From Podarcis muralis (lineage: Eukaryota): 64,000 nt of DNA. The DNA is taken from positions 3,224,001-3,288,000 of the forward strand of contig NC_135658.1 in the NCBI RefSeq assembly GCF_964188315.1. Direction: 5' to 3'. The position numbers were made by a program, and so were the translations under genes. Position 1 is the stretch's first letter; the number at the start of each line of letters is the position of its first letter. The notes beneath the pieces are model-generated. The model did no database searches. It worked only from the letters and a program-made list of their open reading frames with translations, and was not told where the DNA came from. Of this stretch, positions 8,370-64,000 are shown one piece after another.

Positions 8370-9039
8370 GTCGATATCTGCATCAAATAGTCTTTCCCTT
8401 CACAGGCAAGGCATACCAGATGGGACCATAAGCTCTTTTTGAGCTATAACTCTGTGATGCTACAACTGGGGAGTTCCTTATGACATCAGAGACACAAATT
8501 CTGTTGGCAAAAAAGGGGAGAAGATAAGAACACTAGCCACTGCTTTGATAGATCAGGCAAGGGTCCAACTAGTCAAGCACTCTGCATCCCCCCCTCCTCC
8601 CTCTGTTTGATGCTTCCATCTGGAATTCAGAGACATATTACCTCAATCGGTTCCTTTCATCCATGATGACCAACAAACAGACTCATCCTTCTTGCATTTG
8701 TCCATATGAGTACAGGAAGTTGCCTCAGTATGCTGACTGACAGGCTATGGAACCACCTGGTTCAGTATTGGCTACAGGGGTTTTCCCCAGCCTTACCTGT
8801 ATCTGCCACTGGAGACCGAACCCTGGACCTTCCCCAGGCAAAGGAAGTGTTACAGCATGATGCTGTGGCCATTCGCCTTCGCAGTGGGCTACAAAAATGG
8901 CTATAAACTAGCAACTCCCCTCAATGTAAGGGGGAGTAAAAGGAAGGTAATTGATAAGAGGTGACGCCGTCACACACTGTTGTTCAGCCCTGTGACAAAG
9001 CCTGTTGGGTAGAATGGCTCTTGCCATCAGAAAGTTCTT

Positions 9040-9715
9040 CCTAATCCTTCGTCAGAATCTCATTCCTTGTCATCTGAACCCGCTGGTTCAGGCCCTAATC
9101 TCTGGAGCAGGAGAAACCCAGCTTGTTCCATCGTCCACATGACAGCCTTTCAAATATTGGGAGATGATTATCCTCAAATCTCCTCCCTTCCAGGCTGAAC
9201 ATAGCTGACTCCCTCAACCATTCCGCATAAGGCTTGGTTTCCAGACCCAAGAATACCTGGGTCACCCTCCTCTGCACATAGTCCTTCTCTATGACCACTA
9301 TTATCACCACCAACCTGCCCCATAAACTCACCTCTTTCCACATAGTACAGTACTGCTCCAAAGTGGAAAATGTTCCATTGAAAACTGTAGTTTCATAGAA
9401 TCATAGAATTGTAGAGTTTGAAGGGACCCCAAGCACCATCTACTCCAACCACTGCAATGCAGGAATCACACACATTTGAAACTAGAACTCAAGCCAATGG
9501 CTCAAGGACAGTAGGACTTGAACCAATGGCTTCACGTTACAGGAAAGGAGATTCCGACTAAAAAGCAGAAAGAACTTTCTGACAGTAAGAGCTGTTAGAC
9601 AGTGGATGGATGGCCATCTGTCATGGAAGCGTTAGTTGAGATTCCTGCATGGCAGGAGGTTGGACTAGCTGACCCCTGGGATCCCTTCCAACTCTACACT
9701 TCCATGATTCTATGA
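9040..9715. mobile_element. CR1 LINE 3' fragments in both orientations
   Basis: (ATAGAATC)n / (ATTCTATG) tails and the CR1 C-terminal coding remnant MFSLEGRR. Boundaries approximate. Confidence 0.75.
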
Positions 9716-25312: not shown

Positions 25313-25619
25313 GTCTGGTGCGATGCCCTTGTGTTGTTCTACACAGCTGAAAGGGAAGGAGAGAGAAGGAGTCAAGTGGGTTTGAGCCCATGAAACCAGA
25401 ATGGCAGCTCCCCATTCCTATGTGGCCAAGCAGAGGGAGTCAATTCCAAGGGGTAATAGGATGAACATTAGCTAGGAGGGGTTGAAGGAACAATGAGGGT
25501 AATGCCCAGGCCTGCCAGTTGACTTATTTCTAGTCCAGTTTTAAGCCAGTCAGTAAAACCCCAAAGCAGAGCAGAATTAAAAATGAACAGCTCATGTTCT
25601 TCAAACCAAGGATCAGGAA

Positions 25620-26003
25620 ACCAAATTTTACGAGGAACGCTTAGGGGTTATGTTTTGCCTGGGGAAGAGAATACAGAGAGGTCACACGATAGCCATCTTC
25701 AAATAGCTGAAGGGATGTCACATGGAAGATGGAGTAAGCATCTCTTCTGCTGCTCCAAATGGTAGGACCTGAACCAATGGTTTCAAGTTACAAGAAAGGA
25801 GATTCCGACTACATCTCAGGAGTAAGAGCCTTTTGACACTGGAACAGACTCCCATGAGAGGTGGTGGACTCTCCTTGCTTGTAGGTTTTGAAGCAGAGGT
25901 TGGGTGGCCATCTGTTGGGGAGTCTGTAGTTGTAGATTCCTGCATTGCAGGGGGTTGGACTAGATTACCCTTGGGGTCCCACTCAACTCTACAATTCCAT
26001 GAC
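25620..26003 (+). mobile_element. CR1 LINE 3' fragment
   Basis: CR1 C-terminal and 3' UTR sequence ending CCAACTCTACAATTCCATGA. Confidence 0.75.
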
Positions 26004-26198
26004 TAGGAACATAGGAAGCTGCCTTATACTGAGTCAGAACATTTGTCTATTTAGCTTAGGATTTCCCACACTGACTGGCAGTGGCTCTCTCAGATTTCAG
26101 GCAGGAGTCTCTCCCACGTCTACTAGGAGATGCCAGGGATTGAACCCAGGAACTTCTGCTTCCAGACAAATGCTCTACCACTGAGCTATGGACCTTCC
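26003..26198 (-). mobile_element. tRNA-derived SINE (probably Squam2-type)
   Basis: Minus strand reads ATAGCTCAGTGGTAGAGCA...GGTTCAATCCC and ends TTCCTATGTTCC. Related copy at 47430-47605. Confidence 0.75.
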
Positions 26199-44989: not shown

Positions 44990-45345
44990 GATCCAGGGTC
45001 TGAAAACCAAGCCTGATGAGGAGCGGTTGAAGGAGCTTGGTATGTTTAGCCTGGGAAAGAGGAGACTGAGAGGAGACAGGAGAGCCATCTCCAAATATCT
45101 TAAGGTCTGTCACATGGAAGAGGGAACAAGCTTGTTTTCTCCTGCTCTGGAGGGTAGGACTCGAACCCATGGCTTCAAGTTACAAGAAAGGAGATTCCGA
45201 CTAAACATATGGGAAAACTTTTTGACAGTATGAGCTGTTCAACAGTGGAATGGGCTTCCTTGGATGGGCATCCGTCCTGGATGCTTTAGCTGAGATTCCT
45301 GCCTTGCAGGGGGTTGGACTAGATGATCCTTGAGGTCCCTTCCAT
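44990..45345 (+). mobile_element. CR1 LINE 3' fragment
   Basis: Encodes EERLKELGMFSLGKRRLRGD and GFKLQERRFRLNI. Confidence 0.88.
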
Positions 45346-49844: not shown

Positions 49845-50157
49845 CTCTCACTGGGAATATGGAGCAAGCTTGTTTTCTGTTGCTCCACAGGCGAGGACAA
49901 GAACCCACAGGTCCAAATGACAAGAAAGACTCCGACTAAACACTAGGAAGAACTTTCTGATGCTAAGAGCCATTCAACAGTGGAACAGACTCCCTGGTGG
50001 ACAGATGGTGGACTCTCGTTCCTTGGAGGTTTTGAAGCAGAGTTTGGAGGGTTGTCTGTCGTGGATGCTCTAGCTGTGATTCCTGCATTGCAGGGGGCTG
50101 GACTAGATGACCCCTGGGGTCCATTCCAACTCTGCAATTCTACGATTCCATGATTCT
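49845..50157 (+). mobile_element. CR1 LINE 3' fragment
   Basis: Ends CCAACTCTGCAATTCTACGATTCCATGATTCTGTG. Confidence 0.82.
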
Positions 50158-56330: not shown

Positions 56331-58113
56331 AATAATAAATAATAATAAATTTTATTTATATCCCGCCCTCCCCAGCCGAAGCTGGGCTCAGGGCGGCTAA
56401 CAACAATCAAAATAATCCGACATTCTAAAAACATTCATTATAAAATTAATTAAATCAAATTAAGATCAAATTAATGGCAACCATCAAGCAAAATTCTGTG
56501 CAGATTGCCGATTGCCAGAGGAGGGGGTCAGGCTGCGCCCTGACCAAAGGCCTGGTGGAACAGCTCTGTCTTGCAGGCCCTGCAGAAGGATGTCAGGTCC
56601 TGCAGGGCCCTGGTCTCTTGTGACAGAGCGTTCCACCAGATTGGAGCCGCGGCCGAGAAGGCCCTGGCTCTAGTTGAGGCCAGCCTAACCTCTCTGTGGC
56701 CCGGGATCTTTAGGATGTTTTTATTTGCAGACCGTAAATTTCTCTGTGGGACATACCAGGAGAGGCGGTCCCGTAGGTACGAGGGTCCTAGGCCGTATAG
56801 GGCTTTAAAGGTTAAAACCAGCACCTTAAACCTGATCCTGTACTCCATCGGGAGCCAGTGCAGCTGGAATAATACCGGATGGATATGATCTCGCAGTGAG
56901 GACCCCATAAGGAGTCTCGCTGCGGCATTCTGCACCTGCTGGAGTTTCTGGGTCAGTCTCAAGGGCAGCCCCATGTAGAGCGAGTTACAATAATCCAGTC
57001 TGGAGGTGACCGTCGCATGGATCACAGTGGCTAGGTCAGGGCGAGAGAGATAAGGAGCCAACTGCTTAGCTTGGCGGAGATGAAAAAATGCCGCCTTTGT
57101 TATAGCTGTAATCTGCGCCTCCATAGAGAGGGAGGTATCGAAGATTACACCCAAACTCTTAACGGACAATGCTGGCACTAATTGCACCCCCGCAAGAGAT
57201 GGGAGTTGCCCCCTCAATCCCATATCGCTCCGTCCCAGCCAGAGGACCTCTGTCTTCGAAGGATTTAACTTCAACCGGCTCCCACGTAACCATCCAGCCA
57301 CAGCTTCCAGACATCTGGTCAGTGTATCTGGGGCCGAGTCAGGATGGCCGTCCATCAACAGATAGAGTTGGGTGTCATCGGCATACTGATGGCAACCCAG
57401 CCCAAAACTCCGGACAAGCTGGGCGAGGGGGCGCATAAAGATGTTAAAAAGCATCGGGGAGAGAATCGCACCCTGAGGCACTCCACACACCAAGGAGTGG
57501 CGCGATGACAATTCCCCCCCACGCGCCACCCTCTGTCCCCGACCAGAGAGAAACGAGCGCAGCCATTGAAGGACTGTGCCCTGGATCCCCACGTCGGCAA
57601 GGCGGTGGTCCAGGAGTTCGTGATCGACCATGTCGAAGGCTGCTGACAGGTCTAGAAGAATCAGCAGCCCCGACCCGCCTCGATCCAGCTGCCTGCGGAG
57701 ATCATCTGTTAGGGCGACCAGAGCCGTCTCGGTCCCATGACCAGCGCGGAAGCCGGACTGGAATGGATCGAGAGCCGATGTTTCATCCAGAAACCTACCA
57801 AGCTGTTCAGCAACCGCTCTCTCAATCACCTTACCCAGGAACGGAAGATTCGAAACCGGGCGGTAATTGGATAGATCTAAAGGATCTAATGATGTTTTCT
57901 TTAAGAGCGGACGCACCACTGCCTCCTTCAGTTCCCCTGGGAATATCCCGGTGCCAAGGGACAAATTGATGATATCACCCAGGGGGGCCCGCACCTCGTC
58001 TGGACACGCTCTAATCAGCCAAGACGGGCACGGGTCAAGAGGACAGGTGGTGGGCTTTCCAGATTGGAGGAATCTGTCCACATCGGCTCTAGAGGGGATT
58101 CACGGACATTACA
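56331..58113 (-). mobile_element. Young 5'-truncated L2 LINE with an uninterrupted RT reading frame (56528-58081, 517 codons)
   Basis: Contains NYRPVSNLPFLGK, QSGFRAGHGTETAL, GVPQGAILSP, YADD and SRLDYCN with no stop or frameshift. (AAT)n tail and a possible AGAAT TSD. Confidence 0.93.
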
Positions 58114-60603: not shown

Positions 60604-60730
60604 GTTCCAGTGTGCTTTGAAGATATTGCTGTTTGTTTCACGGACGAGGAGTGGGTGTTGCTGGATCCTGACCAGAGAGCTCTGCATAAGGATGTCATGG
60701 AGGAGAATCTTGGGATCGTGGCCTCTCTTT
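60604..60730 (+). CDS. ZNF coding exon 4 (KRAB-A box)
   Basis: [42 protein letters not shown]. Canonical 127-nt KRAB-A exon length, phase 0 to 1. Confidence 0.92.
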
Positions 60731-61290
60731 GTAAGGCTCCTTGTGGGATCGTAATATCTGTATTGAAATTCAAAACTTATCTCTCTGAGATGAACCTAAT
60801 ATATTTTCAGAGCTCAATATCTTCCCCTACAACACATGAGATTACAACATCCCCCAATAAACATCGAAGAGTAAATTACTCTTTTTCCTATGAATTTTCT
60901 TCCTCCAGTTGCAGCTTCTTAAACAATTACCAGGTAAAATGCCATGTAAAATTGCCATGTAAAATGTCAGCTTCAAGTTGTTAGGAAAGATAAGTAGCTT
61001 CTGTCAGGTTTTGTTTTTGCTCCTGTAAGTTTTTGGTTGACCAAAGAGATGACTGACTTTGGAGATGGAGGGGATGCCATGACTGGACCAAGCAAAATCC
61101 ATCCCAGAGAAGAGCCAGGCTTATCAAATTTCACATTCCCATAAGTGTGTTAGATAATGGCAGACAACAAAGGTTGACCTCACATCCAACTCCCTTCAGT
61201 TCTTCCATCGCAATCTTTAATTAGCATCATTACATAATTGGGGGCTCTATTTGTTCCTGAGGCTCCAATCCCTTTTTTTCTCCATTACAG

Positions 61291-62459
61291 ATTGTGATGA
61301 ATTGGAAATCAAGAACAAAGGTGACCACAACAAAATCCCCAGAAAGGAGAAGCCACATAAAAATTTGGAGTGTGGAGAGAGCTGCAGTCAGAGCTCCCAG
61401 CTCACTTCCCATGAAAGAACTCATACAGGGGAGAAACCTTATCAGTGTGGAAAATGCAGCCAGGGCTTTAGTAGAAGCGCAGATCTACATTCACACCAGA
61501 AAATTCACAGTGGGGAGAAACGATTTAAATGTGAAGAGTGTGGAAAGAGCTTCATTCGCAGATCCTCTCTCACTTCCCATCAAATAACTCATACAGGGGA
61601 GAAACCTTATGAGTGTGGAGAATGCAGGAAGGGCTTTGCTAGAAACACAGATTTACGTTTACATCAGAGAATTCACAGTGGGGAGAAACCATATCAGTGT
61701 GTGGAATGTGGAAAGAGCTTCAGTACCAGCTCCTATCTCACTTCCCATCAGAGAATTCACAGCGGGGCAAAACCATATCAGTGCGTGGAATGTGGAAAGA
61801 GTTTCACCTGGAAGAACACTCTCACTATCCATCAAATAATTCATACAGGGGAGGAACCCTATCACTGCTTGGAATGTGGGAAGAGCTTCAGTAAGAGCTC
61901 CTCTTTCACTTCACATCAAAGAATCCATACAGGAGAGAAACCTTATCAGTGTGTGGAATGTGGGAAGAGCTTCAATAAGAAGGACACTCTCACATCCCAT
62001 CAAAGAATTCATACAGGGGAGAAACCCTATCAGTGTGTGGAATGTGGAAAAAGCTTCAATACAAGCTCCTCTCTCACTTCACATCAGAAAATTCATACAG
62101 GGGAAAAACCCCATCAGTGTTTGGCATGTGGAAAGAGCTTTGGTCACAGAAGCTCTCTCACATCCCATCAAAGAGTTCATACGGGGGTGAAACCCTATCA
62201 GTGTGTGGAGTGTGGAAAAAGCTTCAGCACGAGCTCCTCTCTTACTTCCCATCACTTAATTCATACAGAGCAGAAGCCATATCAGTGCTTGGATTGTGGA
62301 AAGACCTTCAGTCAGAAAGGTAATCTCGCTTCCCATCAAAGAATTCACACAGGGGAGAAACCATATCATTGTGTGGAATGTGGAAAGAGCTTCAGCTGGA
62401 AGCAAAATCTCACTTCCCATCAAAGAACTCATATAGGGGAGAATCTGAGAATCCTTTAA
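61291..62459 (+). CDS. ZNF coding exon 5 (1 degenerate plus 12 intact C2H2 fingers)
   Basis: tccattacAG acceptor. C-x2-C-x3-F-x5-L-x2-H-x3-H repeats with TGEKP-type linkers; stop TAA at 62457-62459. Confidence 0.96.
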
Positions 62460-62640
62460 CTGTGGAGTTGGAGGTGACCCCTAATGTAATCTAGTCCAAC
62501 CTGCTGCAATGTAGAAATCACAACGAAAGCCTCCATGATGGAGAGCCATCTAATGTCCGCTGGCCTCCAATAAATGAGAGTTCACTACTTTAAAGGGAGT
62601 CCACTTCACTGTATAACAGCTCTTACCATTAAAAAGTTCT

Positions 62641-62817
62641 AGATACAGGTAGGTAGCCGTGTTGGTCTGCCATAGTCGAAACAAAATAAAAAAATTCCTT
62701 CCAGTAGCACCTTAGAGACCAACTAAGTTTGTTATTGGTATGAGCTTTGGTGTGCATGCACACTTCTTCAGAGAGGTATCTGAAGAAGTGAGCATGCACA
62801 TGAAAGCTCATACTATG
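62641..62817. mobile_element. Penelope-like element terminal-repeat fragment with an inverted arm
   Basis: 10-bp TSD AAAAAGTTCT at 62631-62640 and 62818-62827. Contains back-to-back hammerhead motifs. Confidence 0.72.
62775..62814 (+). ncRNA. Minimal type I hammerhead ribozyme motif
   Basis: GGUAU-CUGAAGA-A-GUGAGCAUGCACAU-GAAA-GCUC-AUACU: both core boxes, stem I, stem II and a palindromic AGCU stem III. Confidence 0.7.
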
Positions 62818-63194
62818 AAAAAGTTCTTCCTGATGTTTCATTAGAATCTCCTTTGTGGTAACTGGAAGACATTTCTTCAGGTCCTACTCTATGGAGCCAG
62901 AGAAAGCAAGCTTACTCCATCTTCTATGACACAAGTTATTCAAAGATGGCTCTCATGGCCCCTCTCAGTCTCCTCTTCTCCAGGCTAAACATACCCAACT
63001 CCCTCGGCTTTTCCACATAATGCTTGGTTTCCAGACCCTTGATTATCTTGGTAGCCCTCCTCTGCACGTGTTCCAGCTTGTCAATATCCTTCTTAGTAGT
63101 TATTCTTTATTTATTTAATTTATGTAGCACCCTTCATCCACATATTTCAAGGCGGTTCACATCATACAGGATAAAAGTATGGGTTTCTCAAAAA

Positions 63195-64000
63195 CAAGTC
63201 ATGCAAGACAAATCATTTTATGGAGTTACAAGCTTGGTGGATCAGGGGAATGCTGTGTGCATAGTGTATCTTGATTTCAGTAAGTCCCCCATGATATTCT
63301 TGCAAGAAAACTGTTGAAATGTGGTTCTAGATTCAGGTAGGTAGTCAGCCGTGTTGTTCTGACGCAATCAAAATATATATAAAAAATAAAGAAATTGTCC
63401 AGTAGCACCTTAGAGACCAATTAACTTTGTTCTTGGTATAAGCTTTCGTGTACTTATACCAAGAACAAACTTAGTTGGTCTCTAAGGTGCTACTGGACAA
63501 TTTCTTTATTTTTTTTATATATGTTGAAATGTGGGTTGAATGAGGTAACCATTAGGTGGATTTGTAGTTGGTTGACTGACAGAACCCAAAGAGTTCTCAT
63601 TAATGGTTCCTTGTCATCGTAGGAAAAATTGACAAGTTGGGTGTTGTTGTTCAATGTTTTTATAAACTATTTGCATGAAGGGGATTGAGGGGATGCTAAT
63701 CAAATTTGCAGGTGACACCAAACTGGGAGGGGTTGCTAATGCTGCAGAAGACACAATCGGGATTCAAAATGACCGTAACAGATTGGATAACTGGGCACAA
63801 GCTAACAATGATTTTCAGTAAAGACATATGTAAGGTTTTGCACTTAGGCAGGAAGAACCAGGTGCACAAATATAAGATGGGGGATATCTGGCTTACTAGC
63901 ATTACAGGTGAAAAGGAACTAGGAGTTGTGGTGGACTGCCTGCTTAACCTAAGTCAACAGTGTGATGCAGCAGCAAAAAAGCTAATTCTATTCTAGGCTA
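63195..64000 (+). mobile_element. CR1 LINE RT-domain fragment, degenerate
   Basis: VDQGNAVCIVYLDFSK, a FAGDTKLGG (FADD-equivalent) motif, and CKVLHLGRKN. Confidence 0.85.
63325..63521. mobile_element. Second Penelope-like fold-back insertion
   Basis: 13-bp TSD TGTTGAAATGTGG at 63312-63324 and 63522-63534. About 70-bp inverted arms around loop 63443-63452, with the same start (CAGGTAGGTAG) as 62641. Confidence 0.75.

What the first reader, a model, noticed from the sequence alone, without database searches (positions are those of the whole stretch)
62737..62814. Hammerhead ribozyme 316 nt downstream of the ZNF stop, back-to-back with a mutated antisense twin
Seen on the plus strand: stem I GGUAU/AUACU, core CUGAAGA, stem II GUGAGC-AU-GCACAU (one mismatch, one extra A after the core), GAAA, and palindromic AGCU with a predicted CUC cleavage after 62809. 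The inverted copy (62737-62772) has GAAA changed to CAAA. Established: Penelope-like elements carry minimal type I hammerheads that cleave as dimers. AATAAA sites at 62569 and 62685 lie upstream. Inference: the ribozyme sits in a long 3' UTR or in read-through RNA and could cut the ZNF transcript, while the fold-back may sequester it.
Basis: partly seen in the sequence, partly recalled or inferred. Interest (0 to 1): 0.75.

Follow-up and report, generated by a model that had tools for sequence, protein, structure and literature searches.

The report
Decayed Penelope retrotransposon fold-back with hammerhead
The hammerhead ribozyme motif is really there, but it is the worn-down end of a Penelope-like jumping-gene fragment that landed as a head-to-head double copy behind a lizard zinc-finger gene. 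This layout is a known habit of these elements and very probably does nothing to the gene.

Summary
A minimal type-I hammerhead descriptor matches once in the 64-kb window, at 62775-62814 (+), and in none of 300 simulated windows. The antisense twin at 62771..62737 (-) carries C at G12.

The two motifs are the inner ends of one retrotransposon insertion (62641-~62813) with a target-site duplication, sitting in an older repeat 3' of a KRAB-C2H2 gene (stop 62457-62459).
- The "twin" is the main body: hammerhead, an ATG in loop II, and about 117 nt of open frame ending just past an AC-rich stem.
- This matches the 3' module from which the Anolis Penelope-like element PAc starts reverse transcription.
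- The plus-strand hammerhead is a ~40-nt inverted 5'-truncated copy, a published hallmark of Penelope-like elements.
- Its last ~10 nt may be duplicated host DNA.

A second fold-back copy lies at 63325-63521, and four contigs from another sample carry the same family.

Several things argue against activity. The plus-strand motif has a G•U at 10.1-11.1 and an A•A mismatch in helix II. It has no sense partner for dimerisation. It is locked in a roughly -59 kcal/mol hairpin, and opening that hairpin costs about 40 kcal/mol.

No Rfam hammerhead model matches. Earlier notes of this scan record similar back-to-back hammerheads elsewhere in this genome.

The parts
62775..62814 (+). Minimal type-I hammerhead motif, forming the short inverted arm of the insertion. 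Predicted scissile bond is after C17 at 62809. 10.1-11.1 is G•U and helix II has one A•A mismatch.
   Evidence: It is the only descriptor hit in 64 kb, against 0/300 simulations.
62737..62771 (-). Hammerhead motif of the long arm. Core and helix II are intact, position 12 is C (CAAA), and there is no 5' strand for helix I.
62641..62772 (-). Long arm, the sense copy of the element's 3' module. It holds the hammerhead, an ATG in loop II at 62757-62755, and an open frame of 39 codons to the element's end at +117 (up to +121 with junction microhomology). The end lies just past a GUUGGUCU/AGACCAAC stem.
   Evidence: Layout compared with PAc in PMC11167929.
62773..62778 (.). 6-nt spacer (hairpin loop) between the two arms of the inverted repeat 62729-62772 / 62779-62822.
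   Evidence: (I3, 84% complementary)
62618..62640 (.). Upstream copy of the target-site duplication. It is certain for 62627-62640 and possible back to 62618.
   Evidence: (D3). Paralogues of the host repeat align once to both flank copies.
62805..62827 (.). Downstream copy of the target-site duplication. 62805-62813 (AGCTCATAC) is microhomology between the target and the 3' part of the hammerhead, so the last third of the plus-strand motif may be host DNA.
61251..62459 (+). Last exon ORF of a KRAB-C2H2 zinc-finger gene, with stop TAA at 62457-62459. The KRAB box exon is at 60610-60753.
62569..62690 (+). Poly(A) signal hexamers upstream of the plus-strand motif: AATAAA at 62569, ATTAAA at 62628, and AATAAA at 62685. 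The last one lies inside the element's A-rich stretch.
63325..63521 (.). Second insertion of the same family, again a fold-back. Arms are 63368-63442 / 63453-63527, 95% complementary. It sits in a CR1-like fragment and is flanked by the 13-nt duplication TGTTGAAATGTGG (63312-63324 and 63522-63534). The hammerhead core is lost by truncation.

Best explanation
The site is one old, neutral insertion of a Penelope-like element (PLE) family, or of a short derivative that such an element mobilises.

What was copied. Only the 3' module is present: the minimal hammerhead of the pseudo-LTR/ORF junction, with the ORF's ATG in loop II, plus about the first 117 nt of the ORF up to an AC-rich stem. In the Anolis element PAc this is the region where the PLE reverse transcriptase starts.

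How the double copy arose (inferred). The nicked plus strand at 62640 primed a cDNA that became the long arm, 62641-62772. The other target strand primed a second, short cDNA on the same kind of RNA. Its primer annealed by microhomology (AGCTC[A/T]TAC) to the 3' part of the hammerhead, and this produced the inverted ~40-nt arm at 62775-~62813. Joining the two gave a head-to-head repeat flanked by a 14-23-nt target-site duplication.

What happened since. Both arms have decayed. The hypermutable CpG formed by C11.1 and G12 has been hit on both arms. The plus-strand motif is a relic. Any RNA that spans the locus folds into a roughly 40-bp hairpin and does not self-cleave to a meaningful extent.

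Basis. Shown: the anatomy, the duplication, the family membership and the folding energies. Inferred: the priming order, the lack of activity, and neutrality for the ZNF gene.
For: The motif is a family trait.
- There are three further arms in the window.
- Four contigs from another sample (L001-L004) carry the same unit (alignment A1).
- L004's right arm meets every min-HHR feature. The other six copies each have 1-3 disruptive changes and no compensatory ones.

The insertion has defined boundaries.
- Five paralogues of the surrounding host repeat run straight across the site.
- They align to both 62618-62640 and 62805-62827.
- Copy 2 has a clean 13-nt duplication.

The arrangement fits PLEs.
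- High 5' truncation with an inverted 5'-truncated copy adjacent at the 5' end is described as typical for PLEs (PMC8557442).
- L001 and L004 show the same head-to-head layout.
- In L004 the inverted arm holds about 30 nt that the other arm lacks, so it cannot be a simple snap-back copy.

The layout parallels PAc (PMC11167929).
- In PAc the ATG lies inside the hammerhead and reverse transcription starts 111-118 nt into the ORF in an AC-rich stem-loop.
- PAc cleaves and extends both target strands.
- Here the 3' end is at +117 to +121, just past GACCAACAC. PAc has GACAACAC at the matching place.
- The frame from the ATG stays open to that point in the three copies that reach it, despite length differences.

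Inactivity is likely.
- The monomer hammerhead fold is -0.9 kcal/mol against an MFE of -6.7, with z = -0.14.
- The hairpin is -59.5 kcal/mol, and forcing helices I+II costs about 40 kcal/mol.
- There is no second sense copy on either strand.
- Divergence between the arms (4/35) is about the same as between the duplicated target copies (3/23). This gives no sign of constraint on the motif.
Against: - No full-length PLE with RT and GIY-YIG domains starting with this N-terminus was found. A phmmer search of 1.84 billion representatives gave only five short junk ORFs. The link to an autonomous PLE therefore rests on layout, on the literature, and on unchecked scan notes of intact PLEs in this genome.
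- PAc itself shares no sequence with this family beyond a short AC-rich motif.
- Transcription and cleavage were not measured. A G•U at 10.1-11.1 and one helix II mismatch need not abolish catalysis.
- The junction inside the microhomology cannot be placed to the base.
Confidence: 0.82

Rival explanations
1. The plus-strand hammerhead lies in a long 3' UTR or read-through RNA of the ZNF gene and cuts it. The antisense arm acts as a regulatory mask.
For: - The motif is on the gene's strand, 316 nt past the stop.
- The core, G12, A13, A14 and C17 are intact.
- In Xenopus, exon-overlapping retrozyme copies tend to lie in 3' UTRs (bioRxiv 10.64898/2026.07.22.740005).
Against: - The upstream arm is transcribed first and pairs with the whole motif. 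The hairpin is -59.5 kcal/mol, and forming helices I+II costs about 40 kcal/mol.
- Min-HHRs need a second sense copy to build helix III, and none is present.
- The motif has G•U at 10.1-11.1 and an A•A mismatch.
- Three poly(A) hexamers lie upstream.
- Min-HHRs show no monomer cleavage and poor dimer cleavage (PMC4209133). PAc needs its own protein, and no cleaved ends are seen in vivo (PMC11167929).
- Decay matches that of the flanking duplication.
Confidence: 0.04
2. The unit is not a truncated autonomous PLE. It is a monomer of a short non-autonomous element (animal non-LTR retrozyme or SINE-like) that borrows PLE enzymes.
For: - All eight arms seen are short, and none continues into an RT ORF.
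- No full-length protein with this N-terminus was found.
- Reptile retrozyme consensus lengths average 176 bp, and retrozymes are related to PLE pLTRs.
- In L002 and L003 the unit abuts the head of a tRNA-derived SINE.
Against: - No direct tandem repeats of the unit occur here or in L001-L004. Tandem repeats are the defining layout of retrozymes.
- L001 extends about 90 nt upstream of the hammerhead into pLTR-like sequence.
- The frame after the ATG is kept open in the three copies that reach the end.
- Heavy 5' truncation is normal for PLEs (PMC8557442).
Confidence: 0.1
3. The fold-back is a hairpin-RNA gene (a miRNA or siRNA precursor) or a dsRNA element in the ZNF 3' UTR.
For: - It forms a long, near-perfect hairpin with z about -11.7.
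- Several Rfam miRNA models match weakly.
Against: - All those matches are far below gathering scores (for example 49.7 against 90 bits) and hit both strands alike, as any palindrome would.
- The hairpin follows from the insertion mechanism.
- There are no RNA data.
Confidence: 0.03
4. The hammerhead-like letters arose by chance.
For: The monomer fold is no better than shuffles (z = -0.14). No Rfam hammerhead model matches.
Against: - 0 of 300 simulations give a descriptor hit.
- The motif recurs in a repeat family, with one fully canonical copy.
Confidence: 0.01

Closest known systems
Minimal hammerhead motifs (min-HHR) of Penelope-like elements (Cervera & de la Peña 2014, PMC4209133; Lünse, Weinberg & Breaker, RNA Biol, cited in PMC6765202)
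   Same: [quoted passage not shown]
- A 6-bp helix II that opens with G10.1-C11.1 in intact family copies.
- GAAA followed directly by a palindromic 15.2/16.2 (AGCU) with no loop 3, so helix III can form only between two copies.
- Such motifs are reported in turtles and snakes.
   Different: - This copy has G•U at 10.1-11.1 and an A•A mismatch. Its twin has C12.
- It has no tandem sense partner.
- Its 3' end may be host DNA.
- Cleavage was not tested.
Poseidon_Ac (PAc), the Penelope-like element of Anolis carolinensis (PMC11167929)
   Same: - The start codon lies inside the hammerhead.
- Insertions end about 111-118 nt into the ORF at an AC-rich stem-loop. Here the end is at +117 to +121, after GACCAACAC.
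- Both target strands are cleaved and extended, which explains head-to-head copies.
- The target is AT-rich.
   Different: - There is no sequence similarity in the hammerhead, the tail or the peptide.
- PAc's ATG is at the start of helix II and its cut is 26 nt after the ATG. Here the ATG is in loop II and the cut would be 13 nt after it.
- No RT/GIY-YIG ORF is present at this locus.
Inverted 5'-truncated copies at PLE insertions (Craig et al. 2021, PMC8557442; Evgen'ev & Arkhipova 2005, cited there)
   Same: A strongly 5'-truncated insert with an inverted 5'-truncated copy directly at its 5' end, forming an inverted repeat.
   Different: Here the whole insert is only about 170 nt, so the inverted repeat consists of little more than the ribozyme motif.
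Animal non-LTR retrozymes (Cervera & de la Peña 2020, PMC7229834; Li, Clavereau & Pollet 2026 preprint)
   Same: Short non-coding units with type-I hammerheads, related to PLE pLTRs. Monomers are dispersed, and some lie in 3' UTRs.
   Different: There is no direct tandem array and no evidence of circular RNA. The unit carries an ORF start.

Membership tests
Hammerhead ribozyme, minimal type I (PLE min-HHR) | Catalytic core C3 U4 G5 A6 N7 G8 A9 | tested here: met
   CUGAAGA is present on both arms.
Hammerhead ribozyme, minimal type I (PLE min-HHR) | G12 A13 A14, A15.1-U16.1, H17 | tested here: met
   The plus arm has GAAA..UC. The minus arm has C at position 12, so this feature is not met there.
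Hammerhead ribozyme, minimal type I (PLE min-HHR) | Conserved G10.1-C11.1 pair closing a 4-6-bp helix II | tested here: not met
   The plus arm has G•U and 5/6 pairs. The minus arm has G-C and 6/6 pairs.
Hammerhead ribozyme, minimal type I (PLE min-HHR) | [quoted passage not shown] | tested here: met
   There is an extra A, and the AGCU palindrome is present. The features are as listed in PMC4209133.
Hammerhead ribozyme, minimal type I (PLE min-HHR) | Helix I closing the motif | tested here: met
   The plus arm pairs 5/5 with one G•U, but the 3' strand may be duplicated host DNA. The minus arm pairs only 2/5.
Hammerhead ribozyme, minimal type I (PLE min-HHR) | A second sense copy nearby to form the active dimer | tested here: not met
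   There is only one copy per strand in 64 kb.
Hammerhead ribozyme, minimal type I (PLE min-HHR) | Mg2+-dependent self-cleavage at C17 | not testable with these tools
   This needs an in vitro assay. Read ends could not be examined.
Rfam hammerhead families (all hammerhead models in Rfam 15) | Covariance-model score at or near gathering | tested here: not met
   No hammerhead hit at gathering score, or at E<=10 on 1.1 kb and on 61 nt. I take this to follow from the absence of helix III/loop 3 in this motif.
Penelope-like element insertion | ORF with PLE reverse transcriptase and GIY-YIG endonuclease | tested here: not met
   Only 39 codons of ORF start are present. No full-length relative was found. 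This is expected for a 5'-truncated copy, so it does not decide the matter.
Penelope-like element insertion | Hammerhead at the pLTR/ORF junction | tested here: met
   The ATG lies in loop II and the frame is open downstream.
Penelope-like element insertion | 5' truncation with an adjacent inverted 5'-truncated copy | tested here: met
   Seen, and also in copy 2, L001 and L004. The feature is as stated in PMC8557442.
Penelope-like element insertion | Target-site duplication and an AT-rich target | tested here: met
   A 14-23-nt duplication around ATTAAAAAG, and a 13-nt duplication at copy 2.
Penelope-like element insertion | 3' end internal to the ORF at an AC-rich stem-loop (the 'tail' site) | tested here: inconclusive
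   The ends fall shortly 3' of the AC-rich strand of the stem, at +117 to +121 from the ATG for copy 1. This matches PAc's 111-118, but only by analogy, and stem covariation is weak (one G-C to U•G change).
Animal non-LTR retrozyme | Direct tandem repeats of a hammerhead-bearing unit | tested here: not met
   Only inverted copies occur, with no tandem copies.

The most novel reading that the evidence does not exclude
The head-to-head insertions here and in L004 may be genomic footprints of the two-strand priming seen for PAc only in vitro. In this reading the second target strand anneals by 7-12 nt of microhomology to the element RNA. At copy 1 it anneals to the hammerhead's own GAAAGCUCAUAC segment. 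Host DNA then completes helix I, and the ribozyme segment helps choose the junction. A weaker variant is that the resulting 40-bp hairpin in a ZNF read-through RNA is processed as dsRNA.
Probability: 0.3. Interest if true: 0.35.

Novelty: new member of a known kind. Interest (0 to 1): 0.13.

Why it matters
It matters little for ZNF biology. The result turns an apparent 3'-UTR ribozyme switch into ordinary transposon debris.

The locus has modest value as a worked example:
- It shows that "back-to-back hammerheads" in this lizard genome come from how Penelope-like elements insert, not from ribozyme regulation.
- It shows that the C11.1-G12 CpG is a decay hot spot of the motif.
- It shows that junction microhomology can be read off such copies, which bears on the still poorly understood PLE integration mechanism.

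Tried and rejected
- Rfam at gathering score on the whole window, and at E<=10 on 1.1 kb and on 61 nt. No hammerhead family matched. Only generic hairpin and miRNA models matched, well below threshold.
- RNA evidence. The look-up of sequencing runs listed bulk and single-cell RNA runs of the species. Transcription is therefore untested.
- The Pfam scan used 61251-61910 and 61950-62456. The window file as a whole was only read inside my own scripts, as the local BLAST subject and for a regex scan.
- Exact-pattern scans of viral contigs and metagenome contigs with a conserved 21-mer found nothing.
- The search of earlier findings by sequence was blank.
- phmmer with the 39-aa sense peptide gave no full-length PLE protein. 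It gave only short ORFs that read through other copies. P0005 has no contig on record.
- Motif search in the PAc supplement found no shared sequence. Reading the consensus showed a different family with the same layout.
- Covariation. Among 7 hammerhead copies all changes are disruptive. The tail stem has one double change in 5 sequences, which is too little to claim.
- A simple snap-back origin of the inverted arm is rejected for L004, whose inverted arm holds sequence that the other arm lacks. It is not excluded for copy 2.
- The search pattern typed was my guess of an undamaged form. L004 later showed that this sequence exists naturally.

Full report
**1. Observation**

On the plus strand, 62775-62814 reads:
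- helix I 5' strand GGUAU;
- core CUGAAGA (62780-62786);
- one extra A;
- helix II GUGAGC-AU-GCACAU;
- GAAA, then GC, then UC with C17 at 62809;
- helix I 3' strand AUACU.

On the minus strand, 62771..62737 carries the same motif with a perfect helix II. It has CAAA in place of GAAA, and nothing upstream that could pair as helix I.

The ZNF ORF is a C2H2 array with a KRAB box exon at 60610-60753. It ends with TAA at 62457-62459, which is 316 nt before the motif. AATAAA lies at 62569 and 62685, and ATTAAA at 62628.

To ask whether this is more than chance I wrote a descriptor after the published min-HHR. It requires:
- helix I of at least 4/5 pairs;
- CUGANGA;
- 0-1 extra nucleotide;
- helix II of 4-7 bp with at most one mismatch and a 2-8-nt loop;
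- GAAA, paired 15.2/16.2, U16.1 and H17.

It hits the window once on both strands, at exactly 62775-62814. It gives no hit in 300 first-order Markov simulations of the window.

Rfam's hammerhead models do not match. This holds at gathering score, at E<=10 on 62500-63600, and at E<=10 on 62765-62825. The motif has no helix III or loop 3, which I take to be the reason. By Rfam's models it is not a family member.

**2. What it is**

*A repeat family.* The two motifs are the inner ends of an inverted repeat, with arms 62729-62772 and 62779-62822 and a 6-nt spacer. The left arm continues leftwards to 62641. That longer unit recurs at 63325-63521, again as a fold-back with 75-nt arms that are 95% complementary.

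*The sense strand carries an ORF start.* Read on the strand where the hammerhead is sense, the long arm runs hammerhead, then an ATG in loop II (62757-62755), then 39 open codons to the end of the element.

*More copies from another sample.* A phmmer search of that peptide against 1.84 billion representatives returned five short ORFs. These are read-throughs of other copies of the same unit in short contigs of one ENA assembly (L001-L004). Aligning all arms (A1) and scoring each against the hammerhead features shows:
- L004's right arm meets every feature.
- The other six copies each have one to three disruptive substitutions.
- No copy has a compensatory change.
- Three copies are hit in the CpG formed by C11.1 and G12.

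This is the pattern of a master sequence with an intact min-HHR whose copies decay neutrally.

*Insertion boundaries.* The DNA around copy 1 is itself an older interspersed repeat, with at least five paralogues in the window. These run uninterrupted across the site. One stretch of each aligns to both 62618-62640 and 62805-62827. The insertion is therefore flanked by a target-site duplication.

The duplication is certain for 14 nt (62627-62640 and 62814-62827) and possible for up to 23 nt. The uncertain part, AGCTC[A/T]TAC, is shared by the target and by the 3' part of the hammerhead. The junction lies somewhere inside this microhomology.

The last third of the plus-strand hammerhead may therefore be duplicated host DNA.

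Copy 2 sits in a CR1-like fragment. It is flanked by a clean 13-nt duplication, 63312-63324 and 63522-63534.

**3. Comparison with Penelope-like elements**

*The hammerhead type.* Cervera & de la Peña (PMC4209133) define the min-HHR of PLEs by exactly the traits seen here. These are the extra nucleotide after A9, a large helix II opened by G10.1-C11.1, and palindromic 15.2-16.2 without loop 3. They report such motifs in turtles and snakes.

*The inverted copy.* Craig et al. (PMC8557442) state that PLE insertions are highly 5'-truncated.

*The Anolis element PAc* (PMC11167929) supplies several parallels:
- Its start codon lies inside its hammerhead.
- Its reverse transcriptase starts 111-118 nt into the ORF in an AC-rich stem-loop, not at the RNA's 3' end.
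- Its protein cleaves and extends both target strands.
- It prefers AT-rich targets.
- Its hammerhead cleaves only when the protein is present, and no RNA-seq reads begin or end at the cut site.

In copy 1 the element ends at +117 from the ATG, or up to +121 allowing for 4 nt of junction microhomology. This is just past the 3' strand (AGACCAAC) of a stem with GUUGGUCU. PAc has GACAACAC at the corresponding place.

The frame from the ATG stays open and in register to that point in the three copies that reach it, despite length differences in the T-rich middle.

PAc shares no other sequence with this family. This is a different PLE lineage, or a derivative of one, with the same layout.

*Earlier scan notes.* Notes of this scan say the genome is a lizard's. 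They record intact PLEs and many back-to-back hammerhead palindromes elsewhere in it. I treat these as leads only.

**4. How the double copy most likely arose (inferred)**

1. The plus strand, nicked after 62640, primed a cDNA on the element RNA. This gave 62641-62772.
2. The minus strand, nicked 14-23 nt away, annealed through AGCTC[A/T]TAC to the hammerhead's GAAAGCUCAUAC segment of an element RNA.
3. That strand primed a second cDNA running to about the 5' end of helix I. This gave 62775-~62813.
4. The two cDNAs were joined head to head.

Copy 2 shows a comparable partial match at the outer junction of its inverted arm. The element has TTTTGATTG where the target has TGTTGAAATG.

In L004 the inverted arm contains about 30 nt (core plus helix II) that the other arm lacks. 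A simple snap-back copy of the first cDNA cannot explain every case, although it remains possible for copy 2.

**5. Would it cleave the ZNF RNA?**

Very probably not, for these reasons:
- As a 40-nt monomer the hammerhead fold is worth -0.9 kcal/mol against an MFE of -6.7. The MFE is no better than shuffles, with z = -0.14.
- In any transcript that includes the upstream arm, a roughly 40-bp hairpin forms. It is -59.5 kcal/mol over 62725-62826, with z = -11.7.
- Forcing helices I and II costs about 40 kcal/mol in three different contexts.
- Helix III can form only with a second sense copy. There is none on the plus strand in the window.
- The motif has a G•U at the conserved 10.1-11.1 pair and an A•A mismatch in helix II.
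- Published min-HHRs show no monomer activity and low dimer activity (PMC4209133; review PMC6765202).
- Three poly(A) hexamers lie between the stop codon and the motif.
- The arms differ at 4 of 35 positions and the duplicated target copies at 3 of 23. The motif has decayed about as fast as the neutral flank.

I could not test transcription. 

**6. Verdict**

The interpretation as a ribozyme acting on the ZNF transcript is improbable, at about 4%.

The feature is a decayed, head-to-head, 5'-truncated insertion of a Penelope-like element family or a short derivative of one. I put this at about 82%, plus about 10% for a non-autonomous retrozyme-like unit. It is a new member of a well-described kind and of low interest. 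It does show junction microhomology that fits two-strand priming by PLEs.

Noticed in passing
63325-63521: Second fold-back insertion of the same family, inside a CR1-like RT fragment. It has a clean 13-nt target-site duplication (63312-63324 / 63522-63534). Its arms are 95% complementary, so it looks younger than copy 1. The left arm is truncated within helix II, and the right arm starts 3 nt before the would-be cleavage site.
   Followed up: partly
L003:1-535 and L002:100-225: In two contigs from another sample the hammerhead-tail unit abuts the 5' head of a tRNA-derived SINE. In L003 inverted copies of that SINE flank the unit on both sides. This could be a preferred junction, a composite element or an assembly artefact.
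   Followed up: no
A1, positions 11.1/12 of the hammerhead: C11.1 and G12 form a CpG in the DNA. Three of seven copies are mutated at one of these two positions (C to T twice, G to A once), and one more has G to C. This looks like a built-in decay hot spot of this family's ribozyme.
   Followed up: partly
L001:225-245: Just upstream of helix I the longer L001 copy reads ...GGTTTCAG|TGTATCTG, which resembles a 3' splice acceptor. In Drosophila virilis Penelope an intron is reported to end at the 5' end of helix I (PMC4209133).
   Followed up: no
62460-63090, with paralogues near 9510-9700, 9017-9277, 25604-25993, 44991-45324 and 49855-50132: The ZNF gene's 3' flank is an older interspersed repeat present at least five more times in the window.
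   Followed up: partly
56528-58081 (-): A 517-aa open frame with an RVT_1 reverse-transcriptase domain (E = 3.8e-37). It is a LINE-type element upstream of the ZNF gene, not a PLE.
   Followed up: partly
26127-26195 (-): The only Rfam gathering-level hit in the window: a tRNA-like sequence at 31 bits (threshold 29) with several non-canonical pairs. It may be SINE-derived.
   Followed up: no
62641-62741 (-) and A2: The element's tail folds into a stem, GUUGGUCU/AGACCAAC, that encloses the T-rich middle. One copy (L003) keeps a pair through changes on both sides (G-C to U•G). It may be the counterpart of PAc's AC-rich initiation stem-loop.
   Followed up: partly
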